Source: Haliotis rubra (Eukaryota). Taken from it: 64,000 nucleotides of DNA. Shown here one piece after another: positions 750 through 64,000 of this stretch. The stretch covers positions 434,001 to 498,000 of the forward strand of contig NW_025765115.1 in assembly GCF_003918875.1 (NCBI RefSeq), in the 5' to 3' direction. A program made the translations under genes and the position numbers. The notes under the pieces are model-generated. The model was not told the origin of the DNA and ran no database searches. It was given only the letters and a program-made list of their open reading frames with translations. Each line of letters starts with the position of its first letter. The stretch's first letter is position 1.

Positions 750-927
750 CTGACTGCATGGTAAATATAATAAAGGAGCTTGTAAGAATCCATGTAGCAT
801 CGTCCCACGTTGGAGTGTTTCGGAAGTCTGTAGCCTCTGTTTGACTTTGGACAGTGGTCATCGACGATGTATTGGCAGGAAATGTTGACTCTGTCGTAAT
901 TTCCAGGGAACTTGTATTTGTCGCCAT
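750..927 (-). CDS. amt: Ammonium transporter paralogue A, first coding exon (N-terminus + TM1); gene continues left of the window
   Basis: Encodes MATNTSS...WDDATWILTSSFIIFTMQS-G, nearly identical to the TM1 motif of gene B exon 1; ends at a phase-1 donor G|GTAGGC at 750/749, the same position as in genes B and C. Confidence 0.9.
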
Positions 928-29300: not shown

Positions 29301-32269
29301 CTGTTATGACGAGTAAAGCGATGTATCATGTCGCCTGACAGACATGTCAGCTTTAAAAGGTTTGCCCTTCCCCTGCAGCACAACAACATGCCAGACTGAA
29401 TGTTTCGTATTTCTCGTTTATCTTCAAAGATTAAGACAAAACGTCTCCAAGAACCGATCTAATATCAAGTGCCATACGTTAAACATGGCTGTTCTTTGAA
29501 ACTGAGTGAGTGTTTTCCTTATTTAGAAATCAATTCTCTTTTTACCCTGAGGCAATTAACGGTCCCTGCTAGCCAGACCCGGTCGCTCTCTCGACGACTC
29601 TCTTTGTAACTACCTTGACCAGGCATGGCTCGACCGTTACAGGTCGTATCATTAATGGGTGATCAGGTCGAAACCATTTCGCTAGTAAGTACTGAAGGGC
29701 CAATTTTGATCGTGTACTGACTTACTTCATGGTATTACTGAGCTAAACTTATAGACTTATAGTATATATATATCCGTTACTTCTAACAATTCTTATGTAA
29801 ATAAAAACCGTGAAGATCCGGGTTAGAATTGATCTTCAGCAACCCATGTTTGTCGTAACAGGCGACTAACGGGATCGGGTGGTCAGGCTCGCTGACTTGG
29901 TTAACACATGGTTGACTCATGCTGTTGATCACTGGATTGTCTGGTCCTGACTCGATTATTTACAGACCGCTGCCATATAGCTGGAATATTGCTGAGTGCA
30001 CCGTAAAACTAAACTCACTCACATTATTTGAATCATTGTCCTGGAATTGTAATTTCTAATTGTTGTGATTCAAGTTACACCACAGCTCAAATGCCTGACT
30101 GTCCTAGTCTAGAATGCCATTGTTCAGATTTTATTCTGTATAAGTAGGCTTTGGTTCAGGTGTGTTCGTCTAATCTTAATACATGTAGTTCAAAAGACAT
30201 ATTTTACGGAAAGGCCCTCAGTGCTCATTTCTCCCTATCTTATCAAGCCGATGTTACTCGCTCCATAGAGCATGGAGTTAATTAAATCCCACATGACAGT
30301 TGGTAACTTACCTGGCTGTCTGTACACCTTTTCGATTGTCTTGTCATGGAGTGGTGCCAGCTATCTAATAGCGGTTATACAGTTGCTTAACTAATCCGAC
30401 TGTATATTTGCTCATGGTTTGTTAATCAGCGACCCTTGTCAGTGTTTATTAGGCCTTTGAACTCACTTTGCTGTGACTCGTGAAGATCCGGGTTAGAATT
30501 GATCGCCAGTAAGCCATGCTTGTCGTAAGAGGCGACTAACGGGATCGGGTCAGCCTCACTGACTTAGTTGACACATGTCATCGTATCCCAGTTGCGTAGA
30601 TCGATGCTCATGCTGTTGATCACTGGATTGTCTGGTCCAGGCTCGATTATTTACAGACCGCCGGACATGAGGTAGTCTAGACCACGGACCATGTTTTGTG
30701 TTATTACTTTATTCTTATTTAATGATACCCTGAAGTCCTTGAATGGAATTTACAAGTTGTAAGACAATAGAGCTTGTAAGTCTTGCCAGGCGCTACTTTC
30801 GGTACAAAGCTCCCTTTGCTCCCATTGCGCGCGCCAAATCGCGATATGCTTACTTCCGGTACCTGATTTCCGGTGACAAGCGTATATTCAAGAACCAGAT
30901 CTGGTTCAAAATTGCTCGAATGCCAAATATGACTTTACTAGGCCGGACCAAGTGTCCAATCATGTTTGGCTGTCACAGCTGTTGACAGTCGTAATAGTGT
31001 ACTAATTGGGGGGTGGGGTGGGGGTGGTGGTTTGGTCGGACGTTTGTTATTCCTGCAAGGATCAGTTCCTTACTGTCAGCAGACAACCATGAGACCATTC
31101 GAAAATGTATGCATCGTTGCTTGTCACCGGAAGTACCAAGGTCTCGCGAAGTGCCGTGACCTACGTACGGGCCCTATTTCATGGATAACAACATCTTTTT
31201 CTCATGGCGTCTCAGAGCTAATTCTTGCTCCTTCATCAAATGAGTGATGCAATGTTTATTCATTAATGTCATCTGGTGCCAAAGCACAGTTCCGTGACAG
31301 TGGAACTGGGGATGACAAATATTGACAGATTCGATATATTGACGTCATCGGACAGGAACTGTACGTGTTATGTAATCTTCATTTACATATTGCGAAACAG
31401 AAACAGAGTATCACGTCATGTCTACATGATGCATTGATACACATCGTGTCATATTATAATGCATCACTGAATCAATACAATGCATACATTTGTCAGTATA
31501 CTTGATAACCGTGAACTTGTCAACTTGGCACCGCCACCGTGACATATGTAGAATACATTTCTACCATATTGGCATGAATACTTGAACCCAATATGTCAAA
31601 TGTATAATAACATATTTATCGGAAATCCACGAATACAAAGAGTTGTGTGGGGTATTTTTACGTTGGTGAAAATGGTGATGATATTTTGTGAATATGCACA
31701 TGTACCACATGTTTTCTTTGGCAAGACTGCACGAGTAGCCTTAACAATTTAACGTCGAGTGTTCTTGAGAAACCTTTAACACCAATTGCTTTACTATCTT
31801 CCCCAAATGCTGATTAAAGATGCTAAGTGAAAGCAAATATGGTTTTGCTAATATCAGCGCCAAACTCTTAATGATTACGATCAGTCTCGTCCTCTACAAA
31901 CATTGGTAAGTTTATTTAAAATGAAGTAAATAATTTTAATGAAACTACGGTTCTCTTTCACCACCAAATTACTTTCATTTGATTGCCAACCAACTTATAG
32001 TCATAGATGAGTTTGATAATCCGATTAATCTGAACATTCGCGATTAAATGTTTTGGAGTCACGCAAATATACTGCAGTTGTTACCTTTTAATATCCCGCA
32101 GGAGGTAAAAACGAAAAAAACCCTTACCAGACTGCATCGTAAATATGATAAAAGCACTGGTGAGAATCCATGTGGCATCGTCCCATGGTGAATTGGCCTT
32201 CGGTTCATATGCTTCCGTCACATTTGAAGTCAAACTTTCATTCCCATACGCCGCTGTTACGTTCGCCAT
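10763..32269 (-). CDS. amt: Ammonium transporter paralogue B (amt-3-like), complete 9-exon CDS, 571 aa
   Basis: Exons 32128-32269, 22898-23080, 22446-22526, 21746-22040, 21480-21551, 19685-19744, 13080-13156, 12137-12363 and 10763-11341 join via GT-AG in frame (1716 nt). Amt motifs: MQSGFGLLESG, FQASFA, AHWVW, DVAGVGPVHLVGG, WWGWLGFNCGS, DDPVGASSVH, GLRVSAEEEIVGAD. Confidence 0.95.
11542..11702 (+). mobile_element. tRNA-derived SINE family 1
   Basis: A box/B box head (tagtggttaaa...gggttcgattccc), tail gcggcgtaaaactaaactcactcac; TSD ctgcccagcg. Confidence 0.88.
11975..12107 (-). mobile_element. SINE family 2 (partial)
   Basis: caaccaagtcagtgagtctgaccacccgatcccgttagtc...cccggatcttcacggg. Confidence 0.82.
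12137..12363 (-). CDS. amt: Amt gene B exon 8
   Basis: Acceptor ttgaag|; AICAVTTTWAAVIIG...KIDDPVGASSVH...HGLLW; donor |GTAAGT. Confidence 0.93.
13080..13156 (-). CDS. amt: Amt gene B exon 7
   Basis: Acceptor tttcag|; YIFHKRKYIIPLIVNGILGSLVSVS; donor G|GTATGT. Confidence 0.92.
13804..14205 (-). pseudogene. DIRS tyrosine recombinase remnant (internally deleted)
   Basis: LVALAAVARSSEIHA (first catalytic R), then HEVR and WTRDTTFANHY (HxxR and Y), with the intervening region apparently missing. Confidence 0.85.
14485..16200 (-). pseudogene. DIRS pol remnant: RT - RNase H - adenine-methyltransferase-like domain
   Basis: ISLDLQDAY, MPFGICMAP, MYLND (degenerate YLDD); VDASFQGWGAHL; WGRPFIDLF...DAF..SWEGLDAYAFPP; spread over several frames. 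Confidence 0.88.
17945..18815 (+). mobile_element. 5'-truncated non-LTR retrotransposon 3' fragment nested in the DIRS gag region
   Basis: KLRTYRLFK...LSKFRCGSLPLAIELGRF...ERICKFCKCNVVEDEIHF (LINE ORF2 C-terminal Cys/His motif), 3' UTR, AATAAA and (TTC)n tail; DIRS 36-bp repeats lie on both sides. Confidence 0.85.
18830..19010. repeat. 36-bp tandem repeat inside DIRS gag (about 5 copies; related copies at 17880-17945)
   Basis: Unit ctggcgccgatcccaagcctggcgctggtctgacga. Confidence 0.85.
19685..19744 (-). CDS. amt: Amt gene B exon 6
   Basis: Acceptor ttaaag|; RAAATTILASCGGGITAFIIS; donor AG|GTAA. Confidence 0.9.
19843..20100 (+). mobile_element. SINE family 2 (Nin-domain-like), full copy
   Basis: cccgtgaagat...gtaagaggcgactaacgggatcgg...gcggcataaaactaaactaactcactcactc. 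Confidence 0.88.
20223..20372 (-). mobile_element. tRNA-derived SINE family 1
   Basis: Reverse complement of the same consensus; TSD ccgacaacaatca. Confidence 0.88.
21115..21362 (-). mobile_element. SINE family 2, full copy
   Basis: Reverse complement of the family 2 consensus. Confidence 0.88.
21480..21551 (-). CDS. amt: Amt gene B exon 5
   Basis: Acceptor ttttcag|; WGWLGFNCGSTFGISGGKWKLAT; donor AG|GTAC. Confidence 0.92.
21746..22040 (-). CDS. amt: Amt gene B exon 4
   Basis: Acceptor attcag|; GAMAERTK...FPAHWVW...DVAGVGPVHLVGG...LGLFMLW; donor TG|GTGGGT. Confidence 0.93.
22446..22526 (-). CDS. amt: Amt gene B exon 3
   Basis: Acceptor ttgcag|; DGENIGNIYSKFVFQASFATTATTIVS; donor G|GTTTG. 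Confidence 0.92.
22898..23080 (-). CDS. amt: Amt gene B exon 2
   Basis: Acceptor ttgtag|; GFGLLESGMASRKNEVNIMLKNVVDVVFGG...YFFLNP; donor G|GTGAGC. Confidence 0.93.
24504..25545. repeat. 79-bp minisatellite, about 13 copies
   Basis: Unit caattgtaggaggttcagataatactggggcacagcggcaaaacgtttactgact(c/t)agcaccttgctactttaacgt(g/a)a. Confidence 0.96.
25591..27658 (+). mobile_element. Mutator/MULE DNA transposon with TIRs and TSD, in intron 1 of Amt gene B
   Basis: TIRs gggatgttcccatttcgtctacctcccatttcgcctaca / tgtaggcgaaatgggatgtaggcgaaatgggaagaatcc; flanking direct repeat aattaaac at 25583-25590 and 27659-27666. Confidence 0.93.
25972..27337 (+). pseudogene. MULE transposase with N-terminal FLYWCH-like zinc finger; frameshift near 26128
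   Basis: MANAF...TQRGGQQVLYDRY...HWKCVQTGCKARC from 25972 stops at about 26130; the long frame (to 27337) has YMDG, QTDFE, GCYFH and RTNNHLEGFH (DDE + CxxH). Confidence 0.88.
29050..29178 (-). mobile_element. tRNA-derived SINE family 1
   Basis: ggggaatcgaacccgggtcttcggcgtgacgagc...ctaccccaccgcccc. Confidence 0.85.
29808..30022 (+). mobile_element. SINE family 2
   Basis: Consensus match. Confidence 0.87.
30478..30662 (+). mobile_element. SINE family 2 (3'-truncated)
   Basis: Consensus match ending at cagaccgccg. Confidence 0.85.
32128..32269 (-). CDS. amt: Amt gene B exon 1
   Basis: MANVTAAYGNES...WDDATWILTSAFIIFTMQS; donor G|GTAAGG. Confidence 0.93.
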
Positions 32270-35649: not shown

Positions 35650-36370
35650 ATGAACAATGACAACATTTAGCCATATAGCTAAACCCAGTTTCATGCATGC
35701 CAAAGATTTGCCTTATGCTTTGGTTGTCAAGCTGGCATCTTGGTTTCTGAGTTGGAATATGTGTATTCAGCTGTTGCAAGCCACACTAGCAAATGTTGTG
35801 CTTTCTGACATTTATGAGCACCGATTTTGTAACGATGCATCCAAACACAGGTTTTCAANNNNNNNNNNNNNNNNNNNNNNNNNNNNNNNNNNNNNNNNNN
35901 NNNNNNNNNNNNNNNNNNNNNNNNNNNNNNNNNNNNNNNNNNNNNNNNNNNNNNNNNNNNNNNNNNNNNNNNNNNNNNNNNNNNNNNNNNNNNNNNNNNN
36001 NNNNNNNNNNNNNNNNNNNNNNTATATCTATTTGCACTATTTGCAACAAGTTTCCATTTGTAAATATAGGACTGCACTTGCTCAGCTGCGATATTTAAAA
36101 AAACCCAAACACCACGGATTGCGCCTAATTTGTAGCATTTTGTAATGTTTACAAACAGCTAAGAGGTAAACATGTGCCACAAAAAATACCATCTATTCCC
36201 GATATGGCATATTTTGTTAATGTCATCTAATAATGTATTAAAAATATATTCCTGCATATACTTCTAAAAGAATGCGCTTCCGTCTTTTTATGATTATGGA
36301 TATATTGTGAATGCTCTTTCTTAGTGTAACTTTGTAATACAGAATGAGCCTATGGCCTAAACTATGAAAG
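35650..36370 (+). mobile_element. Degenerate LINE 3' fragment spanning an assembly gap
   Basis: YLQQVSICKYRTALAQLR resembles the LINE ORF2 C-terminal motif also seen at 18200 and 46500. Confidence 0.5.
35859..36022. other. Assembly gap (N run)
   Basis: Run of n. Confidence 1.
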
Positions 36371-37713: not shown

Positions 37714-39819
37714 CCATATAGCTGCTTCTTCTACCCCATACAGAAATAAGCAATGCCTGACGAATTTTACGAGTTTTTTACGAGGCGCATATGATGGATT
37801 TATCATGCTATTGATGCAAAGCCATGGTATGTTCAATAGTCAGACTATTATTGTTAATCTAACAGAATCATCATACAGTGCTATTTATTGAGAAAACATA
37901 GACGAATGACGTCAGGGAAATAAATAATTATCTTCATAGTTTTAGTCTAGCTTATTAACTATTGGGATCTGAAGCCCAGACCCCGAGACAACATGTTTTG
38001 ATCGAATAAGAGTTGGCCCCTCAAGCTTGCATCAAACAGACACTTCATTAGCGCGAAACATTTTTGGTTGAAAATGTCATTAATGCCAGTTAATGTTCTT
38101 GGCATAACCCTTATTGATAAAGTCTGATCTACGCGCTGACAATGACATCAGTTACTTTGGAAATACGGATAACTTGAATTATCAAGGAATCAGCATGAAA
38201 TGCCTTATTTATCTGAACATATATAATTGATATTTCACTCGAGTAATAGTCGAAACGTCCACGCCAGAGAGTACATATCTGGCGAAATAGAATCCAAGTG
38301 GACGTCTTAAGCTGGAGCTGATGGTATATCGTTAGGCGTGGAATTCAGTCGTTTTCTTTGTTACCTGGCAAGTTTACGTAATCCCGTGGCGTGATAAAAA
38401 ACCCTTTAATATCAATTTTGTCAGTTCACTCGGTACAACAAACATGTCCTGAGACACGAAGATTCAAATATCCTCCATAAATGGTCCACTCGTCAGTGGC
38501 GCAGAAGCTATCAAGCACAGGTGTTAACTTTATTGGTTAAACATTGTCAAAATCGATGGTGGCTTTGTTTTCAGCACTGTCCTGATTTTGCTGACGTGAG
38601 ATAAGCAATTACCTTATTACTGGCGTTTCAACACACGCCGAGAGTATGTGACGGACGGTCACTGAATGCCACTTCAGTATGTTGTCATGATCAGCAGAAT
38701 TAGATATCGACTCGACAGGAAACATCGTGTTGTTTTACAAGCGGCGTAACATGTCTTTTCACACATATGGTATCAACTAAACTTTCGTCTTAGAACTGAA
38801 AGAGTGTCATGTTACACTGAAATGTGTCATGAACGTTATCTCTCAAACATTCAAACATTGATTGCGTCTTTTATCATATGCCATATGTTCGACTGATATG
38901 AGAATTCCCCAATATTCAATCATCATATTCATTTTATTTTCTTGTTTTTTTCAGGTAATCGTTATAACAGAATCATCAGTAGCACGTCATATTTAACATT
39001 GATACCCGACAAATGTGAATTTGAGTGAAGTCTAAATATAATCTAAACTACATATGTGAACCGAGAAGTAACTATTTCTACTGGGGATGGTCATCAGTAT
39101 GCACTTGTCTGTAAATGTCAAACCATGATCATCTCAGATTACCATCACCGCAAAAGATTCTCCTCAAGCTAACGGTATTACACCTTTCTAAATTCTGAGG
39201 GGCAGTTCCCGAAGTAGGTCGGAAGGTGTAGGCGGTACAAATGACTGGGTTTGCGCTGGAATAGGCGTGATTCTTAGAAGCAGCTGACTCTTGAAGACGG
39301 TAATCTGCACGTGATCAGTGGCACCAATGGTCATACGCTTATCGCTGAGTCTAATCGAGGAACTTCTCCTGAGAAACTGTGATATCAGCAAGGGCTTTTC
39401 GACAAGTATTACCTTACTTCAAGGTATTTTCTACTCATGGGAGGATCGTTTTCATCACGGGAATCTTATGCACCTGCACGTTTAAGCCAGACATTTCTGT
39501 GAAAAGCCTTTGAGAGGATATTTGTGTGTGATGTCATAAGCGAGGCGGATATGAAATACTTATAAATGATAATTGCATGTTAATTGAAGCTGGTACCAAA
39601 CCAAGATATCAATAGCATCAAGTGTGAATATGTGAGGAGCACAACCCAGCTGGTGTTAACATGATGTCGCATGACGATAAACACAAATATCAAATGTTTT
39701 AGTTGCTAAAAGCATTCTGGATCGTCATAGCTTAAAGTGACAGCTGTTTTTCAACAATCCTTATTTTCTTGATGGATGGACAGATGTAATAAGTGCACAT
39801 GTGATATACCTCCAACATC

Positions 39820-39961
39820 ATGTCTAATACAGCATGGGGGAATGATACTTTGGGAGATGTGACAACAACTTTATCCCTTGGGAAGAATTTTCGGGTTCAA
39901 TCTCATGATGATGCAACTTGGATACTTAGCAGCGCTTTTGTGGTGTTTACAATGCAGTCAG
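39820..39961 (+). CDS. amt: Ammonium transporter paralogue C, first coding exon 1a
   Basis: Hand translation: MSNTAWGNDTLGDVTTTLSLGKNFRVQSHDDATWILSSAFVVFTMQS-G|GTAAAA; 142 nt, same length and phase as gene B exon 1. Confidence 0.88.
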
Positions 39962-40586
39962 GTAAAACCAATACCAAGTGCTTATCGATTTGAAGTCCTT
40001 AACACATTTCTCTATCAGTATATTCAGTCTTTCATTATTGTTGTGAAAACGCGCTACTCATTCCAGCTTGTTACAACGCCTTATCATGATTGTAGATGTG
40101 TAACCGTAGCAGTATATACATGGTTGTATATTCTACCTGTAGTTTAAAGAGTGTAATTTTTAATTATTCAAGAAAATGTGGTTATAAAACCCTTGTCAGA
40201 AGTGTTTAATTGGGGAAAACACTCTTCACTCTACCGGTTTCTGAATTAGGCTTAAAATAGAATTGATCTGTCAATTTCTTCATAATTTGGCATCGTTTGT
40301 TATCAAACTCCACATGTAGTTAGTCAAATTGGTCCTAATTGTATATATATATACCCTTAGTATTATTTTCGCTTTATCAACATATTGGACTCCATATAGA
40401 TTGTTAATTAATGACAAGACACAATTATTGTCATACGTATTGATACAATATGAAAGATGCTTCTCTTCACTAATGACCAAGTACTTTCATTAGTGTTGCA
40501 TTGCATCTGAAATCCGATTAACCCACCATTAGTTATTGACCACAGCATATACAATCAAATGTGTAAATTACACGAAACCAAGGAGG

Positions 40587-40934
40587 TGAGATGAAATTGG
40601 GTTTAACGTCTTGCTTGAGAATATTTCGCTCATATGACGACGTGCATGCGTGTGTATGTGTATGTGCGGCTGCTTGTACTAGCCCAGACTTAAGCTGGTT
40701 TTATAGTGCTAGCCCACTGAGATACCATGCCGCAGTGAAGCATGAATACCCCTCTCAGACACATTATACTGACTCCAAGCCGACCAGCCCTTGTTGTACC
40801 CATTAATGCCGAGCGCCAGGCAGGGACCAACAAGTACCATATTTTAACGTCTTTTGTATGACGCGGTCGGGGATCGAACCCGCGATCTTCCGCTCTCCGG
40901 GCGGACGCTCTAACCACTACACCACGGAGGCGGT
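40587..40934 (-). mobile_element. tRNA-derived SINE family 3 (central region resembles V-domain SINEs), full length
   Basis: Head gtggtgtagtggttagagcg...gggttcgatcccc on minus; perfect 16-bp TSD cacgaaaccaaggagg (40571-40586 and 40935-40950); diverged relative at about 9590-9850. Confidence 0.88.
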
Positions 40935-41145
40935 CACGAAACCAAGGAGGTTTCTTAGGTTATAATATTAATTATATAAAGAATAAGTACGAGTGTCAAG
41001 ATTAATAGCAATCGAAAATGCAATATTGTGTATGCTTACCGCGTGTCTAACCCTACTCAATGATCGTGAAAGATAACGTTACGTTTTCAGATTGACTTAA
41101 GCTCTTAAATTTTAAGAGCTATCGCTTGGTGTATGTTCCTGATCA

Positions 41146-41269
41146 ATGGATAGCTCCGCTACTACGCAGATAGGTCTCTCGAGGGGCGAGCCTTCTCATG
41201 GTGAAGACCCTTCATCAGATAGTATATGGATACTTTCAAGCACATTTGTCATCTTCGCGATGCAGTCAG
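41146..41269 (+). CDS. amt: Ammonium transporter paralogue C, candidate alternative first coding exon 1b
   Basis: Hand translation: MDSSATTQIGLSRGEPSHGEDPSSDSIWILSSTFVIFAMQS-G|GTCGGT; open from ATG to a phase-1 donor at the homologous position. Confidence 0.75.
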
Positions 41270-41309
41270 GTCGGTCGTTTCTTTTGGAAGGAGTTTCAGT
41301 GTAGATTAT

Positions 41310-41628
41310 TGGGAACTGCCCATTATCTGGTGACTTATAAATGACCGAATTATTATTATTGAATAAGGAGATACACATTTGCGTTTTGATATTACGTACC
41401 CGCAATGTTCCACTTGAACTTGTGGTCATTTATGTTGTGGGGAAGTTGCAGTTTAAGCTTATATCTGGGAACTGCACGTTATCTGTCGACTTATAAATGT
41501 AATTATTGAAAATTAAGGAAATACACATTTATGTGTTTTCATCATTTGCGCGTTTGCGTATACCATACCCGCAATGTTCCACTTGAATTTGTGATTAGGT
41601 GCGTTGTGAAGAAGTTGCAGTTTAAGCT
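41310..41628. repeat. About 157-bp tandem duplication
   Basis: tgggaactgc..ttatctg..gacttataaatg and tacccgcaatgttccacttgaa...gaagttgcagtttaagctt each occur twice. Confidence 0.8.
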
Positions 41629-42052
41629 TCAATCTCACTTCTCGAGTGCATTTGTATTAGTTCATAAGTCTTAAGCGACGAAAGTGATGTGTTGTTAGTG
41701 TTGGTACCTTAATGATCTGGCATCGTAAAGACAGGAAACCTGACCTATACGCAGTGGAAAATAGCCACCGATTGACGGACTAGTTATAAACGACTGAAAA
41801 GAAAGTTATGTTGATGGTAACGAGTAATTCTAGCAAGTGAAGACTGTAGCGATATCATAAATGTCGCTTCCCGCGTGTCATGGAATCAGATTAAAGAGTA
41901 TTTTGCGTGCAGAGAGGTATACATTGCAATAAATGAGTCTAAAATGTTTTATATCTGTAATCAATAAACAGAGACAGTAGTTATGATATGGCAAGACACT
42001 CAGTAGTACATTAGTCAGAATGAATACTTCTTGTAGCAATGACTCTTCGTTG

Positions 42053-42093
<41 letters not shown>
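42053..42093. repeat. (GAT)n microsatellite
   Basis: Pure gat run. Confidence 0.95.
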
Positions 42094-42094
<1 letters not shown>

Positions 42095-43059
42095 CGATTT
42101 ATTTATGTAAATGTTTGATACAAAGGACGAAGTATGTTGAGTAATATTGTTAAATAAAGAATGTTGTATTAGCAATCGGGTTACATTGTTTTGACACACC
42201 AAGTTAACTGAAGGCAAATAAGGACAGATATGAATTTTGACATTTATAGTGTTTGCGATAGATTTGGGATGTTCTTGCCATGGTAGGTATCAAATAATGC
42301 AGGCACGAAAGCATTATAATGTAAAAGCAATATCAATGTAATATCGTTGCAGCATGAAAGGCGCAACTTCTTTGAATGTAGATGGTGATAAAGACATCCA
42401 CAACTATTATTCTGTTATGTTCTCCACAGGTTGTAATGCATCGATTCTTGAATATTTTATGTGTAACATAAATCTCCGAGGCTGGAATTTTCCGAATGTA
42501 TGCTCATAAATTCTTCTGCACTTCATAAAAAGGCAATACAACGTATAGAAAACATGTACTTTCATCAAAATTCAGAAATAGCAAACTTATGATTCTTTAT
42601 TGATTGGTGTGGTAAGATTCTTTCGGGAAATGGACTAATGGCAGTGCAGATGATAATTCGGATGCAAGTAATCTGAGCCGCATCATCTTAACAAATTCAA
42701 TATAGTTTGGTTCATGATCGCGTGTCTCACTGAAGAAATATAGTTACTGTCACTGGTAAGTCAATAATGAAATGCTAAATTTACATGATTTTGTATGAAA
42801 CTGTCTACTAGAAGAGGAAAATGTGTCTCGGCTGGTTGTATTTTTTATCTGAGCAACATATAAAAGTCTTGCCAATCACAATGCACAAATATATACTTAC
42901 GATTCTATGTGAACCTTCATGCTTCCAGTTCGTTGATTTCATGCCAATTTAGCAATATTCAAGCAAATTGCGGAGAGAAAAGGCGCGATTTACAAAATTA
43001 ATCTGAAGTGGAAATGTGAACTAATTTATAAGCTACCCAACAACGTTATACTTACAATC

Positions 43060-45669: not shown

Positions 45670-47054
45670 GAGGGACTCGGTCAGTGGTGCCAAGTAAACA
45701 AGATGTCTGTCAACCCAGAGAAGACAAAGGTCATACATTTTAGAAGCCAAGCAGTAGAAAGAACATGTGATATTTCAGTGTGGAGACAAGACCCTAGAGA
45801 TAGTAGAAAGCAACCATTACCTCGGCCTGCTCTTGACAGAGCATATGAACAACACCCGGATGAGAAATGCGGTGGCAGGCGCAGCCAGCAGGGCACTAGG
45901 ACTCCTCATATCCAAGTTGAAAATCCTTGGAGGCATGCAGCACAGGACTTTTACAAAGCTTTACGATTCCATGGTATGGGCTACTATAGACTACGGTGCT
46001 GCAATATGGGGAACGTATCATACCCCAGCCATAAATGCTGTTCCCAACCGAGCTATGAGGTACTTTATGGGCGTGAGGAAGTATACGCCGAACATTGCTT
46101 TAGCCGGTGATATGGGGTGGGTGCCACCGGTTGTCCGGCAATGGAAGAATGTTGCTCGATTTTACAAGCGATCATACGATCAGAACCCGAACAGAATATT
46201 TTTTAATGTGTTCAAGTGGGCCCATTCTAAGGCTGTGTCTAGTAAGCGGAATTGGCATCAACGTGTACACAGGAAATTTAGATCTTTAGATCTTGAACAT
46301 TTTATCCCTATTGGAAATTCATTTTACATATTACGCTTTTTAATATCAGAGGTTGAACATGTGATGCAAAACTATTTACGTGAGTGGAGTGTTGCAGTCA
46401 GTCAGGAGAATAGTAAGCGGGGAGATGGGAAGAACCAGTTGAAACTGTATCGTAACTTTAAACAGTCGTATGGAGTTGAACCGCATCTGCAGAGTAGCCT
46501 CCTTTGGTCGTATCGCCGAGAGCTAGCCATGTTGTGCTGTGGTGTCGCCCCGCTACGTGTTCAGATGGGCCGATACACCAACATGCCCCTGAACCAACGT
46601 GTGTGTTTTAATTGTAATGAGTGCGTTGAGGATGAATGTCATGTTTTATTCCAATGTCCACTTTATTTTGATGTTACAAACAGTCTTTTGGTCAAATATG
46701 AAGAAATATGTTATGATTTTAAATGTTTGAGTGATAATGACAAGTTTAGTTTTATCATGTCCGAGGCCGAGATGTTCTTCTTAGCAACCAAAACCTGCAA
46801 ACTTTTATTGGGAAAACGGGAAAGTATTTTATATCATGATGGGTAGTATTTCTTTTAGAATGTGTATTGTGTATTTAACAATTATTGCTTTATAATTCCC
46901 AGGTATTAATTAAACAATAGTTTACATTGTACATATAGTCTCTCGTAACCCTCAATGGGTGGCTCGTAAAGGATAGTTTGTTTTAATGACTTGTCAATTG
47001 TTTTATTTTGTAAATACGAGGTGAGACTTTAATAAAATATCTGTCTGTCTGTCT
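45670..47054 (+). mobile_element. 5'-truncated LINE (RT thumb + C-terminal Cys/His motif + 3' UTR with (TCTG)n tail)
   Basis: WCQVNKMSVNPEKTKVIHFR / YLGLLL...LCCGVAPLRVQMGRY...RVCFNCNECVEDECHVLFQCPLY; AATAAA near 47032, then tctgtctgtctgtct. Confidence 0.9.
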
Positions 47055-47077
47055 TGAAAGAAATCATACACCTTGTT
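46874..47077 (+). repeat. 204-bp direct repeat, copy 1
   Basis: Matches 52270-52473 with one visible mismatch (cataca/cacaca). Confidence 0.92.
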
Positions 47078-47093
47078 AAACGATAGCCAGAGT

Positions 47094-48101
47094 ATGAATT
47101 TACCAAAACAGACATTTATTGAACAGTTACTTGGCTGTGTGAAATGTGATTTACATGAACTTGAAATGTGTCGATTTGAATTGCACACAAACGCAAGACA
47201 AAAAACTGATTTACCTTATCAAAATGATAGTTTGAAAAAGCGGCTACATCCGAGAAGGAAAAACGGGGAATCATTAGAAATAAAATTAGCCAAAGATTGT
47301 TTCTATCTTTGACGGGCATGTAATGGAGAAGAGATAGCAGAGCTTAGAACCCCCGATGATGAGAATGCAGGTATCAATGTCGTTGGACAGACGTCAACAG
47401 ATATTGAATGTGAAAAAGTCAGTAGTACCATTAATCCAGACTTGACACCTCGCATATCCATTGAAAGCCAATCGTGTGATATATGCGACCATTCTGGCAA
47501 TGGCGTCACTAGATCTGAGAAACAGGGCAGTAAGAAACATGTTATTGGCAGTATGGTGGATAGGTTAATCCAGTGTTCACAGTTATCATTCTTTCCGGAG
47601 CAGAATGATTCACAGACACATATGGATGATGTAATGGATTACGTGGAGAAAAGCGACACCTTCCAAAGCGTTAATGGAGAACAAAAAAACGTGTCCACAT
47701 GTCGTCGTACCCAGCTAAACAAATCATATGATATTCAGGTAACCTGTAACGCAGACGAAGAGAATACCAGGCAAGTGAAATCTGTGAAAAGGAAAGGAAT
47801 TGAGAGATTCAGAGGAGTAGTGAGTGGAAACCGGGTAGCTAGGTTCTTCATTGGAGGAATAGACAAACGGTGTACTGAAAGCGCAATGAGGGACTTTCTT
47901 CAGGATAAAGGTGTCCGGGTTACACATCTCCGCTTTAATTGTAACCCTAACAAGAGATCAGCTTGGGCTCAGTTGAATGTTGACTCTCTCGATAAGGTGA
48001 GAGTTGAGGATCCAAACTTCTGGCCAGACCATATTACTGTGAAGAAATGGATTCCTTGGAGTCAGTACCAAAGGAAAATGCAAGATAAATGGATGTACTA
48101 A
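47094..48101 (+). pseudogene. LINE ORF1 (one in-frame TGA at 47310-47312); C-terminal RRM-like domain
   Basis: ORFs 47073-47312 and 47442-48101 share a frame; FFIGGID...LNV...FWPDHITVKKW motif typical of LINE ORF1; its end overlaps the ORF2 start. Confidence 0.75.
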
Positions 48102-51100
48102 GCCTAATGACATGGAACTGTAGAGGATTCACGTCCTCAGCTGCATATCTCACTGACTGTCTGCAGACATTCTCGGTTGATATATGTGCTCTTACAGAAC
48201 ATCAGTTGCATCAACGCAACGTATGTCTACTGTCACATTTACCACCTGACTATTCTTTTCTTGTAAAATGTTTTGGTGATCATGATGATCTTCCAGAAAA
48301 TTACTTCCCAGCACGGGGAGGAGTTGCTTTAATCCTGTCACAACGTGTGGCACCATACACACAACTGATTGATACAGATTATGACTTTGTAATAGGTGCA
48401 GAGATACATATACCAAATAGCCGACCATTGGTGATATTGTCGGTGTATTTACCTGCAATAACACAACCCTTGAAAAACTTAATGTGAGCTGTTGACGTTC
48501 TAGAGGGTTTGATGCAGTCATTCTGTGAAGAATATACAGTTATTGTAATGGGGGACTTCAACACCAATGTTACAGGACCTAGATGTGACTTCCAGCCAGA
48601 TTCCAGAAGCAGACGACTTCTTCACCTGCTGTCATCCTTCGACATGGTATCCATAGTAACACAAAGTGAGTGTCAAGGACCAAACTGGACCTTCTGTTCA
48701 TATGATGGGGGACCTAAGACACTCATTGATCACGTGTTAGTATCACAGAATGACCAAATTAACGTTACTCATGCCAGAGTACTTGATGATCATGGATTCA
48801 ATGTCTCGGATCATCACCCCATTGTATGTGGATTTGCGTTAGATACTGCCTTGCCACATCATATTGACAATGAAGCGAAACATAGAGTTGCGTGGGAGAA
48901 AGCTCGTGACCGTGGTATCATCCGTGATTATACATTTGCTGTGTCACATATCCTGTGGCCGTTGCCGGTTGTAGATGTCAACTGTGGTGAAGAGGGGCTA
49001 AACCTATACTATGAGACAATTGTCGCCTGTTTGATAAATGCTGCTACTGATACACTTCCTCTGAAACGGTTCCAGAAAACATCTAAAGCCCTACTGGACA
49101 GATTGCGTAAAAGTCTCCCATAGGGACATGACTATGGCAAGAACAAGGTGGAAGCAAGAGGGACGTCCCAGAGGCATGCAACACATATCATTCAAGGAGT
49201 ACAAGATGAATAAAGACAAATTTAGGAGAGAGATGAGACAGGCTGCAAATAATGTGATATCTCAATGGATGAGTGACCTTGAGAAATCATCTGAACTGAA
49301 TCAAAAAGCTTTCTGGCACCTGGTGAACCGAAGGTTGAAAGGATCCCGTGACAAAGTGATCACACCAATTCAAGTAGAAGGGGTCACATACAGCAACCCT
49401 GATGATGTGCTTGAAAAATGGGCTTCTCACTTTGAAACTGTCTTTCAGTCATCAGATAAGCCTCATTTTGATGAATGTTTTAAACGCAACATCGAAAGTC
49501 AGGTTTCTGAGATAAGGAAACTGTGCAACGCCGACACATCTGATCCCTGTCATATCACACTTAATGAAGTTGAGGCAGTGTGCAAGAAGCTAAAAAATGG
49601 AAAATCAGGTGGAATTGATGGATTAGTATATGAGCATCTGAAGTTTGGAGGGAGAACATTAATGCATCACCTGAGCTGTCTATATAACCTTGTCATTCAA
49701 ACTGGTTTCATTCCACGAGCCTGGAAGCGTAGTGTTATCCTGCCACTACATAAAGGAGGCGGCAAATCAAAGAAAGACCCAAACTGTTATCGCGGTATTT
49801 CATTAAGCCCCGTAATAGAGAAAGTCTTTGAAATGGCCCTACTGCCACACTTAAACGCTCTGCGCCAGGATAACAATTTCCCTAACAAACAGCAGATGGC
49901 TTACCAGGAAAGTCTCTGTTCAACTCACGCTTCGTTCAACCTGCAGGAGACAGTTCAGCACTACCAAGAGCGAGGCAGCGACGTTCATGTGCTATTTCTT
50001 GACAGCTGTAAAGCATTCGACAGTGTGTGGCATGATGGTTTGCGGAAGAAGTTGAAGTTGTATGATGGTGGAGTAAAAGGAAAACTGTGGACTGTTATAG
50101 ACAAGCTGTACCATGATATGGAGAGCTGTGTATTGATAGGTAACATGCAATCGAGGTGGTTCACTCTTCAACAAGGCGTACGTCAGGGTGGAGTGTTGTC
50201 TGCAAGGCTGTATCTGCTGTATATCAACCAACTCTTGGACGATATTACTGAATCGAAGAAGGGTGCCCTGATTATGGATTTGAACACAGAATGTCCAACT
50301 CAAGCCGATGACGTAGCCTTGGTGAGTTCCTGTACCAGTAATCTCAGCTCCCTCCTGAGAATTGCAGAAAACTACAGTAGGTTGTGGCGCTTCACATTCT
50401 CCTCTAGTAAGACTGAGCGCGTTACATTTGGGGCTAGCAGAAAATCTAAAGTTGTTGCTGACGACCTCTCCTTATATGGGTGTCTACTACCAACAGTTAA
50501 CCAAGTCAAACATGTCGGCATTATACTCTCTGACAGGTTTAATTCAATGGAAAGAACACTAGACGCATGTACTAAGATCAGATCCTATGCTTACACAATG
50601 TCAAGGAAAGGATTGAATCCATCTCTGGTGTCTCCCATTGTCTGTCTGAAACTGATCCAGAAAGTAGCTCTACCAAAGTGTCTTTTCGGTAGTGAGCTGT
50701 GGAACTCTCTCAGTCAGACTGAGATTCTTATGCTTGAACGTTCCTACAGGCATGTCATAAAGACGATCCAAGGCCTCCCAAAGAGAACTAGGACTGATGT
50801 GTGTCTTGGTCTCCTGGGTTTACTACCTCTGGAAGCTGAGATAGATAAAAAGAAACTCTTGTTTGCCGGAAACCTCATAAACATGAACACATCTTACCTT
50901 CCACACCAGGTGTTTCTGACAAGGCTACTGTGCTTTGTTCATGGTGTGTGTGCACAACCGAGAGGTTTCATTCCTGATCTGATGAGACTCCTCCAGAAGT
51001 ATCAGTTGACAAATGTGCTAGAAGACTACTTGTCAACTGGCATATTTCCACGTAAGGCTTCTTGGAAACAAAGTGTGAAAGCCGCTGTTTGGAAGTTCTA

Positions 51101-51566
51101 TTCCGCCTCTTGGACTGATAGGATAACGGTTGAACCAGATCTCCAGTGGTTCGCACAGATACACAGAGATCTGTGTGTTCATCCAGCATGGACATTGTCA
51201 CGGGAAGACCACCTGTACCGAACCTCGTCCAAGTTCCTGGTGCAGTTATGTTCCAGCATTAGATACATTAAAGATGCTGTGTACCTGTGTGAGAAGTGTG
51301 GACGGTTATATAGTGATCCGTGTGTTCATGCTGTCGTGCAGTGTGATAATTTACTCTCTGTGAGAGATCAGCTGTGGTGTGAACTGATCAATATTGGTCC
51401 TGTGGACTTCAGTGTATGGTTCCACAACTTGTCAGACATTGAGATGGTGTTGTGTCTTCTGTCATGTAGCCCTCAGTATGGACTTAATGCAGAGGATCAG
51501 AGAACATTTACTAGTGTGGCTGTAAGGTACATTCATCTGATGTGCAGAGAAGTCACACAGCACTAA
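48089..51566 (+). pseudogene. LINE ORF2: apurinic-like endonuclease + reverse transcriptase
   Basis: TWNCRG, LTEH, GDFN, IDH, SDHHP (EN); YRGISL, KAFDSVWH, GVRQGGVLS, QADD (RT); in-frame TGA at 48485 and a frameshift near 49075. Confidence 0.93.
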
Positions 51567-60650: not shown

Positions 60651-60970
60651 GATGTGTTCAGAAAGCAATATAGATATTTCTGGAAAAGCGCCCCTATACA
60701 GATATAAGTAGTAAAGATAGATTTTATTTGGACTTGTAGATAGCTAGAACGTAGCGCATTACAGCATGTTCTCTTGGCACCGGGGGAAAACACACCACAC
60801 CTACCCCCCTCCAACAACAACAACAACAACAACAACAAATAGCACACATACCAAAAACACCAAAAACCAACACACGCGTGTACCAATACCACCTATCATC
60901 ACATCTGACTTAATATAACATTCCATTTGCTGATTCTTGGTTTTGTGTACAAAACGTCTGTTTGTTGCAG

Positions 60971-61236
60971 GTTTTGGTCTGTTGGAAAGCGGCTCAGTCT
61001 CCAGCAAGAACGAGGTGAACATCATGGTAAAGAACGCCGTGGATGTAATCTGCGGGGACTCACATACTGGATGTTTGGTTATGGACTGAGTTTTGGTGAA
61101 GATGAACGCGGTGCTACCCCTTTCAATGGCTGGGGGGACTTTTTTGTCACGGCAGATGAAGAAAGTTTAGGATACGTGTATTCAAAGTTCTTTTTCCAGG
61201 CGTCGTTTGCCACGACCGCTACTACTATCGTTTCAG
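60971..61236 (+). CDS. amt: Amt gene C exon 2 (1-nt frameshift in a G run near 61054; sequencing error or pseudogenisation)
   Basis: Acceptor ttgcag|; GFGLLESGSVSSKNEVNIMVKNAVDVIC-(shift)-GLTYWMFGYGLSFG...FQASFATTATTIVS; donor G|GTAACC; 266 nt, one short of the required 267. Confidence 0.88.
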
Positions 61237-61307
61237 GTAACCGACATTTATGCTACCTAATTTGTTTGTTTACTTGTTCTTTAACGTTGCACGGTAAATA
61301 ATGGAAC

Positions 61308-62897: not shown

Positions 62898-63090
62898 NNN
62901 NNNNNNNNNNNNNNNNNNNNNNNNNNNNNNNNNNNNNNNNNNNNNNNNNNNNNNNNNNNNNNNNNNNNNNNNNNNNNNNNNNNNNNNNNNNNNNNNNNNN
63001 NNNNNNNNNNNNNNNNNNNNNNNNNNNNNNNNNNNNNNNNNNNNNNNNNNNNNNNNNNNNNNNNNNNNNNNNNNNNNNNNNNNNNNNNNN
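62898..63090. other. Assembly gap (N run)
   Basis: Run of n. Confidence 1.
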
Positions 63091-63397
63091 NAAAGAGTGA
63101 TTCATCACTTCAGAATTTAACCTACATTTTGCAGTGGTAATGTTGTATTATAGATACATCTGAAGAGTTATCTCTGTCTATTTGGTCAGATTCCAAAAGA
63201 TTCGACATTTTTCTCACGAGTATACAGCTTCACCTGTAAATAATTACTACATTTATATGGAGCAGTATTTCACACAGACTACGATTATAACTTCAATAAT
63301 GCGATAATTCAACGATACAAATGATTGCAATCTCTAAATGTGACATGATTATACTTACATATTTATTGCTCAAAAACATGACAACTTTTTTCTATGA

Positions 63398-63997
63398 TAT
63401 ATGATAAACTATTTTGAGTTCAGTTGGTATACATCCTATGTTTGATTGTCATTCCAGATGTATATGATAAACTATTTTGAATTTTAGTTGGTATACATCC
63501 TATGTTTGATTGTCATTCCAGATGTATATGATAAACTATTTTGAGTTCAGTTGGTATACATCCTATGTTTGATTGTCATTCCAGATGTTTATGATAAACT
63601 ATTTTGAGTTCAGTTGGTATACATCCTATGTTTGATTGTCATTCCAGATGTATATGATAAACTATTTTGAGTTCAGTTGGTATACATCCTATGTATGATT
63701 GTCATTCCAGATGTTTATGATAAACTATTTTGAGTTCAGTCCAGATGTATATATGATAAACTAATTGAGTTCAGTTGGGTATACATCCTATGTTTGATTG
63801 TCATTCCAGATGTATATGATAAACTAATTGAGTTCAGTTGGTATACATCCTATGTTTGATTGTCATTCCAGATGTTTATGATAAACTATTTTTGGTTCAG
63901 CCGGTGTATATACTATGTTTGATTGTCATTCCAGATGTATATGATAAACTATTTTGACTTCAGCTGGTATACATCCTATGTTTGATTGTTATTCCAG
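63398..63997. repeat. 63-bp minisatellite, about 9-10 copies
   Basis: atgataaactattttgagttcagttggtatacatcctatgtttgattgtcattccagatgtat. Confidence 0.95.
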
Positions 63998-64000
63998 GTG

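What the first reader, a model, noticed from the sequence alone, without database searches (positions are those of the whole stretch)
39820..41269. Duplicated, swappable N-terminus+TM1 exons in an ammonium transporter (gene C exons 1a and 1b)
Seen: two separate ATG-initiated open exons 1.2 kb apart, both ending in MQS-G|GT at the same phase-1 junction and both able to join exon 2 at 60971. 1a is ...HDDATWILSSAFVVFTMQS and 1b is ...SSDSIWILSSTFVIFAMQS. Their extracellular N-termini are unrelated, while TM1 similarity is kept at protein level despite much nucleotide change. Neither is in the ORF track. Inference: the pattern suggests purifying selection on both copies, i.e. alternative-promoter or mutually exclusive isoforms that swap the ectodomain and TM1. 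Amt proteins are trimers and TM1 lies near the subunit interface, so the isoforms could differ in assembly, trafficking or tissue use.
Basis: partly seen in the sequence, partly recalled or inferred. Interest (0 to 1): 0.8.

Follow-up and report, generated by a model that had tools for sequence, protein, structure and literature searches.

The report
Alternative first exons in abalone ammonium transporter
An abalone ammonium-transporter gene carries two start exons that encode different outer tails and first membrane helices, and a distant snail keeps both, so the gene probably makes two transporter versions, though no RNA evidence shows this yet.

Summary
Exon 1a (39820-39961) and exon 1b (41146-41269) each start with ATG and stay open. 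Each ends ...MQS G|GT in phase 1 and fits the only downstream Amt exon 2 (60971-61238). A TM1 profile finds just four such exons in the window: 1a, 1b and the first exons of paralogues A and B.

New comparative evidence supports selection on both. A distant relative's 517-kb contig has a 1a orthologue (19/22 identical), two 1b-type exons (X; Y 16/22) and one exon 2, in the same order. Only these exons align between the species. Synonymous sites are saturated (pS 0.6-0.94) while pN is 0.09 (1a) and 0.17 (1b/Y). A Batillaria gene model joins a 1b-type N-terminus to exon 2.

Joining 1a to 1b gives an immediate stop, so the two must be used exclusively, most likely from separate promoters.

Caveats:
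- There is no junction evidence. The runs held only a SINE lying between the exons, plus one weak contig on 1a.
- The 1b donor (GTCGGT) is weak.
- Exon 2 lacks one base in a G-run (61054-61057), either an assembly error or a recent null allele.

This is a new member of a known architecture.

The parts
39820..39961 (+). Gene C exon 1a. ATG, 47 codons plus 1 nt, donor CAG|GTAAAA. Encodes an N-terminal tail with one N-x-T sequon and the outer part of TM1 (DDATWILSSAFVVFTMQS). This is the canonical animal Amt type.
   Evidence: TM1 HMM E 1.8e-14. The orthologue in the relative is 19/22 identical, with pN 0.09 against pS 0.88. A 168-nt contig of run X1 lies on 39745-39912 (weak).
41146..41269 (+). 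Gene C exon 1b. ATG, 41 codons plus 1 nt, donor CAG|GTCGGT (weak). Encodes a tail without an N-glycosylation sequon and a divergent TM1 (EDPSSDSIWILSSTFVIFAMQS).
   Evidence: TM1 HMM E 4.6e-12. Identity to Y in the relative is 16/22, to X 15/22 and to the Batillaria P0024 N-terminus 14/22. pN 0.17 against pS 0.94 versus Y. No RNA contig lies on it.
60971..61238 (+). Gene C exon 2, the common acceptor exon in phase 1. Encodes GFGLLESG...ATTATTIVSG. One base is missing in the G-run at 61054-61057, which shifts the frame.
   Evidence: Pfam PF00909 at 36.8 bits (cut-off 23.2) on 61056-61238, profile positions 46-104; positions 17-42 match on 60973-61053. DNA identity to the relative's exon 2 is 76.6%.
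41133..41153 (+). Short upstream ORF (MFLING*) that overlaps the 1b start codon. It would only matter if the 1b transcript starts upstream of 41133.
   Evidence: sequence only.
40588..40935 (.). Very high-copy SINE between 1a and 1b. It is flanked by a 17-nt target-site duplication, CACGAAACCAAGGAGGT, at 40571-40587 and 40936-40952. It is not part of the gene. It explains why the RNA-like runs appeared to hold this stretch.
   Evidence: Loose ends sit at 40583 and 40935. Summed depth is in the millions in X19. The X19 contig bridges 40587 to 40972 without it.
45703..51566 (+). Non-LTR retrotransposon (endonuclease plus reverse transcriptase ORFs) inside the roughly 20-kb first intron.
   Evidence: PF03372, PF14529, PF00078.
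32128..32269 (-). Exon 1 of paralogue B, which lies head to head with gene C. It is a single first exon and serves as a comparison.
750..927 (-). Exon 1 of paralogue A. The rest of the gene lies left of the window. It serves as a comparison.

Best explanation
Gene C is an animal Amt-type (amt-3-like) ammonium transporter gene with a small cassette of alternative first coding exons. Exons 1a and 1b are old tandem duplicates. Each supplies its own start codon, its own extracellular N-terminal tail and the outer two-thirds of TM1. Each ends in the same phase-1 donor.

A transcript that starts at one or the other exon is spliced to the common exon 2, about 20 kb downstream, and then to the constant body of the transporter. 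This gives two subunits that differ only in tail and TM1. If 1b were included after 1a, the reading frame would hit a stop at once, so the two are mutually exclusive at the protein level. The most likely means is separate promoters.

What is shown:
- the exon anatomy;
- both exon types are conserved under purifying selection across a deep gastropod divergence;
- one shared exon 2.

What is inferred:
- separate transcription starts;
- actual splicing of each exon to exon 2;
- any functional difference. Plausible ones are glycosylation of the tail (1a has an N-x-T sequon, 1b and its orthologue Y have none), contacts with the neighbouring subunit, and tissue-specific expression.

The missing base in exon 2 is most likely an assembly error or a very recent lesion.
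For: 1. Anatomy. Both exons have an ATG, an open frame, a phase-1 GT donor and a compatible acceptor at 60970|60971.
2. One gene. tblastn with 12 animal Amt proteins and a TM1 HMM find no other Amt piece on the + strand between 41300 and 60930, or after 61240. An independent DNA contig from run X19 covers both sides, 38501-40587 and 40972-41362, so 1a and 1b really are neighbours.
3. Conservation. On contig ena:ERZ25071447:ctg86859 (L001-L003) the order is 1a' (L003:5803-5971), X (L001:1212-1320), Y (L001:3943-4045) and an intact exon 2 (L001:10001-). All three first exons have an ATG and G|GT donors: GTAGGC, GTTAGT and GTAAGT.
4. Only the exons align between the two species at DNA level. pS is 0.88 and pN 0.09 for 1a/1a'. 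pS is 0.94 and pN 0.17 for 1b/Y. For exon 2, pS is 0.61-0.87 and pN 0.05-0.085.
5. The exons fall into two types. 1a/1a' share 19/22 residues, 1b/Y 16/22 and 1b/X 15/22. Cross-type pairs share 12/22 or fewer. The duplication therefore predates the species split.
6. P0024, a Batillaria attramentaria gene model, joins a 1b/X-type N-terminus (DDPASDAVWILTSTFIIFTMQA) to exon 2 and 3 sequence.
7. Joining 1a to the ttttcag acceptor at 41090 gives ...MQSD*.
8. One contig of run X1 covers 39745-39912, which is the 5' leader plus part of 1a. This is weak.
Against: - There is no junction or transcription-start evidence for either exon. No contig lies on 1b in the three RNA-like runs laid. The single X1 contig has depth 2.3, and the run may be DNA.
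- The 1b donor GTCGGT departs from consensus at +3 and +4. The 1b ATG has T at -3 and is overlapped by a 6-codon upstream ORF.
- The X19 DNA contig has a 3-nt deletion at 41248 that removes one TM1 residue of 1b. It is in frame, but it sits in a helix.
- Exon 2 is frameshifted in this assembly. I could not test that against reads or same-species proteins.
- Conservation rests on one relative's contig plus one gene model. Two further relatives showed no first exon within 10 kb (L007) or about 18.6 kb (L006 with L009) of exon 2, so they could not be scored.
Confidence: 0.65

Rival explanations
1. Exon 1b was functional in the ancestor and still is in other gastropods. In this abalone it is silent or decaying, and only 1a is used.
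For: - The donor GTCGGT is weak, while the relative's Y has GTAAGT.
- The start context is poor and an upstream ORF overlaps the ATG.
- A one-codon deletion polymorphism sits in TM1 at 41248.
- No RNA-like contig lies on 1b, while one lies on 1a.
- X, the second 1b-type exon of the relative, has no counterpart in the window, so exons of this cassette can be lost.
Against: - 1b is still open from ATG to donor. It keeps 16/22 identity to Y although synonymous sites are saturated.
- The indel is a multiple of three.
- The absence of contigs in three small runs of unknown tissue says little.
Confidence: 0.15
2. The whole of gene C is a recently dead pseudogene in this genome. The exon 2 frameshift is real, and both first exons are relics that have not yet decayed.
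For: One base is missing in the G-run at 61054-61057, which gives stops in all downstream reading. No same-species protein or transcript for gene C turned up in the protein collections.
Against: - This is a single lesion in a homopolymer.
- Both halves of exon 2 still show pN of 0.05-0.085 against saturated pS.
- Both first exons and all splice sites are intact.
- Earlier follow-ups on this genome judged similar frameshifts to be assembly errors (unchecked notes, a lead only).
- The downstream exons lie outside the window, so there is no second lesion to point to.
Confidence: 0.12
3. Exons 1a and 1b belong to two different genes. Either a mis-assembly collapsed a tandem gene pair, or the body of one gene was deleted.
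For: Amt genes are tandemly duplicated here (A, B and C in one window). The assembly has N gaps at 35859-36022 and 62898-63091.
Against: - No gap lies between 1a and 1b or anywhere up to exon 2.
- An independent contig covers both sides of the 1a-1b interval.
- The relative has the same arrangement, several first exons and then one exon 2, on a 517-kb contig with no other Amt exons between them.
Confidence: 0.03

Closest known systems
Variable-first-exon genes (UGT1A locus, clustered protocadherins)
   Same: Tandem paralogous first exons lie upstream of the constant exons. Each has its own start codon and a donor that joins a common acceptor. Only one is used per transcript, and the number of variable exons differs between lineages: two here, three in the relative.
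   Different: The cassette has only two or three exons. The variable part is an N-terminal tail plus about 14 residues of TM1, not a whole domain. Promoter choice has not been shown here. (The description of UGT1A and protocadherins is from my own knowledge, not tested here.)
AgRh50a/AgRh50b of Anopheles gambiae (PMC4216128)
   Same: [quoted passage not shown]
   Different: That case is in the Rh branch and changes the 3' end and C-terminus through an extra 175-bp exon. It does not change the start exon or TM1.
Fungal Mep2 N-terminal extension (review PMC10794816)
   Same: Mep2 has an extended extracellular N-terminus ahead of TM1. [quoted passage not shown] This is a precedent for the swapped tail touching the trimer partner.
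   Different: Mep2 has one fixed N-terminus. Its deletion had no growth phenotype. The sequences are unrelated to the 1a and 1b tails.
SLC7 first-exon cassette in the same genome
   Same: Another transporter gene of this abalone was reported with duplicated first exons joined to one constant body.
   Different: It is a different family on a different contig. I did not check it.

Membership tests
Amt/Mep/Rh superfamily, Amt branch (Pfam PF00909 Ammonium_transp) | Significant match to the family profile | tested here: met
   Exon 2 piece 61056-61238 scores 36.8 bits (cut-off 23.2, E 2.4e-9) on profile positions 46-104. Piece 60973-61053 scores 20.5 bits on positions 17-42. phmmer gives 199 hits among 1.84 billion proteins. 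The hits fetched read as Amt-type proteins, and P0001 carries PF00909.
Amt/Mep/Rh superfamily, Amt branch (Pfam PF00909 Ammonium_transp) | TM1 with the conserved W-I-L...F-x-M-Q-S/G-F-G-L-L-E motif at the start of the domain | tested here: met
   Both 1a and 1b supply WIL..F..F.MQS, and exon 2 supplies GFGLLESG. The alignment to solved Amt 6EU6 starts at this motif. Alone, the first exons are too short to score in Pfam.
Amt/Mep/Rh superfamily, Amt branch (Pfam PF00909 Ammonium_transp) | Pore residues (Phe gate, twin His) and 11 transmembrane helices | not testable with these tools
   Exons 3 onward of gene C lie beyond the window end. In the relative they are present downstream at L001:13340-13633 and 16182-.
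Genes with alternative (variable) first coding exons | Two or more paralogous first exons in tandem, each with its own ATG and open frame | tested here: met
Genes with alternative (variable) first coding exons | All have donors in the same phase, compatible with one common acceptor exon | tested here: met
   Both end ...TCA G|GT in phase 1. There is a single exon 2 acceptor at 60970|60971.
Genes with alternative (variable) first coding exons | The exons cannot be used together in one coding transcript | tested here: met
   Joining 1a to the acceptor at 41090 gives a stop after one codon.
Genes with alternative (variable) first coding exons | Each variable exon is maintained by selection in other species | tested here: met
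   Orthologues of both types are in L001-L003, with pN far below a saturated pS. This rests on one relative plus one gene model.
Genes with alternative (variable) first coding exons | Transcripts joining each first exon to the constant exon, with a separate transcription start for each | tested here: inconclusive
   Read laying on 38500-42500 returned SINE contigs only, plus one 168-nt contig on 39745-39912 and nothing on 1b. No same-species proteins were in the collections.

The most novel reading that the evidence does not exclude
Gastropod Amt genes carry a conserved cassette of two or three alternative start exons whose number differs between lineages. The exons swap the extracellular tail and the outer part of TM1, giving glycosylated and non-glycosylated subunits. 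These subunits could differ in trimer partner choice, membrane targeting or tissue. This would be the first isoform system in the Amt branch that alters a membrane helix.
Probability: 0.5. Interest if true: 0.55.

Novelty: new member of a known kind. Interest (0 to 1): 0.45.

Why it matters
Amt proteins work as trimers. In solved structures the N-terminal region lies close to the neighbouring subunit (PMC10794816).

A natural, conserved pair of isoforms that differ only in tail and TM1 would make a clean tool. It could be used to ask what this region does for assembly, glycosylation, sorting or transport in an animal that excretes ammonia.

My literature searches found no report of alternative start exons in an Amt gene. 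The only isoform case found in the superfamily alters the C-terminus of an Rh protein.

For annotation, the result warns that one-model-per-gene pipelines will miss 1b-type exons. It also warns that this assembly may carry homopolymer errors inside real genes.

Tried and rejected
1. RNA evidence. The look-up of sequencing runs on 39700-41400 returned runs with small shares. Laying four of them showed they hold the high-copy SINE at 40588-40935, not the exons. A homologue search with the 1b ORF (41146-41301) found no candidate sharing enough 5-residue words.\n3. Homologue searches with P0024 and with the exon 2 ORF found no same-species protein, so there is no check of the frameshift or of spliced products.\n4. 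P0024 is not on record for a contig look-up. P0002 and P0003 sit on contigs of 2.3 and 0.9 kb.\n5. Three more animal contigs were examined. L006 with L009 and L007 have no first exon within 18.6 and 10 kb upstream. L008, a more distant animal, has a single first exon 2 kb upstream. These are uninformative rather than contrary.\n6. I first read DP-x-S/T-D before TM1 as a sharp 1b signature. Other animal Amts have intermediate forms such as EPSDATW...FAMQS. I therefore rely on the identity matrix and synteny, not on the motif.\n7. ARAGORN finds no tRNA gene in 39000-42000. The tRNA-like stretch is part of the SINE.\n8. The mis-assembly and two-gene readings were rejected.

Full report
**Observation**

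The window is animal DNA. Earlier notes on the same genome call it abalone. It holds three Amt-type ammonium transporter paralogues.
- Gene A, minus strand: exon 1 at 927-750, with the rest off the window.
- Gene B, minus strand: exon 1 at 32269-32128, with further exons down to about 10.9 kb.
- Gene C, plus strand.

- Exon 1a runs 39820-39961. It has an ATG, 47 codons plus one base, and the donor G|GTAAAA.
- Exon 1b runs 41146-41269. It has an ATG, 41 codons plus one base, and the donor G|GTCGGT.
- Exon 2 starts at 60971 behind an AG. With the carried-over G it reads GFGLLESGSVSSKNEVNIMVKN....

The two first exons share only 45 nt of TM1 at 76% identity. Their N-terminal tails are unrelated. 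A profile of 131 TM1 segments, searched against all six-frame pieces, finds exactly four copies in the window: A, B, 1a and 1b. They score E 2e-16 to 5e-12, and the next hit scores E about 1.

First, exon 2 is not intact in this assembly. One base is missing in the G-run at 61054-61057, so VDVICG is followed, one frame over, by GLTYWMFGYGLSFG... The relative reads VDVIFGGLTYW without interruption.

Second, by Pfam and by alignment to the solved Amt 6EU6, exon 2 begins at about profile position 17. The first exon therefore gives the tail and roughly the outer 14 residues of TM1. Exon 2 gives the rest of that helix.

**One gene or two?**

tblastn with twelve animal Amt proteins finds nothing Amt-like on the plus strand between 41300 and 60930, or after 61240. 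The only hit there is the reverse-transcriptase part of a chimeric query. It marks a LINE (endonuclease plus RT) at 45.7-51.6 kb, which accounts for much of the 20-kb intron.

No N gap lies between 1a and exon 2. A 2.9-kb DNA contig of public run X19 covers 38501-40587 and 40972-41362. So 1a and 1b are neighbours in an independent assembly.

**Comparative evidence**

phmmer with the second half of exon 2 against 1.84 billion proteins gave P0001 as the best hit, at 85% identity. P0001 is an ORF on a 517-kb contig, ena:ERZ25071447:ctg86859. I walked upstream along that contig in two further look-ups, giving loci L001-L003. It carries, all on the strand of the gene:
- a 1a orthologue at L003:5803-5971 (...GKNFRIRSHDDATWILTSAFVVFTMQS G|GTAGGC);
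- 13.6 kb further on, a 1b-type exon X at L001:1212-1320 (MLICNNSSVGECRFQDPSSDAMWIIQSTFIIFTMQS G|GTTAGT);
- a second 1b-type exon Y at L001:3943-4045 (MPVYDGESGHHFNDPPTDSMWIVSSTLVIFAMQS G|GTAAGT);
- 6 kb later, a single intact exon 2, followed by exons 3 and 4.

No other Amt exon lies between these.

Between window 30000-64000 and these 38.7 kb, blastn aligns only the TM1 part of 1a and exon 2. Nei-Gojobori counts:

| Pair | pS | pN |
|---|---|---|
| 1a / 1a' | 0.88 | 0.09 |
| 1b / Y | 0.94 | 0.17 |
| Exon 2 | 0.61-0.87 | 0.05-0.085 |

Synonymous sites are saturated, yet both exon types keep their protein sequence, start codon, frame and donor. Over the last 22 residues, 1a/1a' share 19, 1b/Y 16 and 1b/X 15. 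Cross-type pairs share 12 or fewer. The duplication is therefore older than the split of the two species, and both products have been kept.

P0024, a gene model of the caenogastropod Batillaria attramentaria, joins a 1b/X-like N-terminus to exon 2 and 3 sequence.

**Mechanism**

If 1b were spliced in behind 1a through the ttttcag acceptor at 41090, the frame would read ...MQSD and then stop. The two exons therefore cannot serve in one coding transcript. The simplest mechanism is a promoter in front of each, with each first exon spliced to exon 2. This step is inferred, not shown.

The tails differ in one testable respect. 1a has an N-D-T sequon, and paralogues A and B have several sequons. 1b and its orthologue Y have none. 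[quoted passage not shown] An effect on trimer contacts is therefore plausible but unproven.

**RNA evidence**

This part failed. The sequencing-run search was dominated by a SINE between the exons, at 40588-40935. The SINE is flanked by a 17-nt target-site duplication, reaches summed depths in the millions, and is absent from the X19 contig.

Of the three RNA-like runs laid, only X1 has a non-repeat contig. It is 168 nt at depth 2.3 and lies on 39745-39912, which is the leader plus part of 1a. Whether that run is RNA is a guess, and one such contig could equally come from sparse DNA. Nothing lies on 1b. I treat expression as untested.

**Points against 1b in this species**

- Its donor GTCGGT is weak.
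- The -3 position of its ATG is T.
- A six-codon upstream ORF overlaps the ATG.
- The X19 contig has a 3-nt deletion at 41248 that removes one TM1 residue.

The relative's third exon X has no counterpart here, so members of the cassette can be lost. These points feed the rival that 1b is silent in abalone (0.15).

**The frameshift**

The frameshift feeds the rival that gene C is a young pseudogene (0.12). Against that, it is a single homopolymer lesion in an exon that otherwise looks constrained. Earlier follow-ups on this genome judged similar frameshifts to be assembly errors (unchecked notes). I could not test it.

**Comparison with what is known**

The architecture is that of variable-first-exon genes such as UGT1A and the clustered protocadherins (from my own knowledge), on a small scale. 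Within the Amt/Mep/Rh superfamily, my searches found only AgRh50a/b of Anopheles, which differ at the C-terminus (PMC4216128). They found no report of alternative start exons in an Amt gene.

I class this as a new member of a known kind and of moderate interest. The conservation is solid. Use of each exon and any functional consequence remain open.

**Limits**

- Conservation rests on one relative's contig and one gene model.
- The relative's species is unknown to me.
- dN/dS is computed on 22-27 codons.

Noticed in passing
window 61054-61057: Exon 2 of gene C lacks one base in a G-run (GGGG where the reading frame needs five). This shifts the frame between VDVICG and GLTYW. The relative's exon is intact. 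It is either an assembly error or a recent null allele.
   Followed up: partly
window 40571-40952: A SINE at 40588-40935 carries a tRNA-like stretch and a 17-nt target-site duplication (CACGAAACCAAGGAGGT). Its copy number is enormous in runs of organisms A and D. It is absent from the X19 DNA contig, so it is an insertion polymorphism or a species difference.
   Followed up: partly
window 41248-41250: The DNA contig of run X19 lacks 3 nt here. This removes one residue (V) from the TM1 part of exon 1b and stays in frame. The same contig differs from the window at about 3.8% of positions.
   Followed up: no
window 45703-51566: A non-LTR retrotransposon sits in sense orientation inside the first intron of gene C. 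It has split endonuclease ORFs and an 812-aa ORF with a reverse transcriptase domain.
   Followed up: partly
window 23081-22444 (minus strand) versus 60971-61238: The stretch that is a single exon 2 in gene C is split by an extra intron in paralogue B (23081-22893 and 22545-22444). Intron positions therefore differ between the neighbouring paralogues.
   Followed up: no
window 63390-64000; L001:17000-20200: There are tandem repeat arrays downstream of exon 2 in both species. The window has units of about 60 nt ending ...gtcattccagatgt. The relative has a unit of about 64 nt over roughly 3 kb. I did not compare them.
   Followed up: no
runs X5 and X17: Two peat metatranscriptome runs hold 7-11% of the sampled words of 39700-41400. 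This is presumably the SINE or a carry-over. I did not lay them.
   Followed up: no
L001:1212-1320: The relative has a third start exon, X, which is 1b-type and carries an N-N-S-S sequon. It has no counterpart in the abalone window, so the cassette size differs between lineages.
   Followed up: partly
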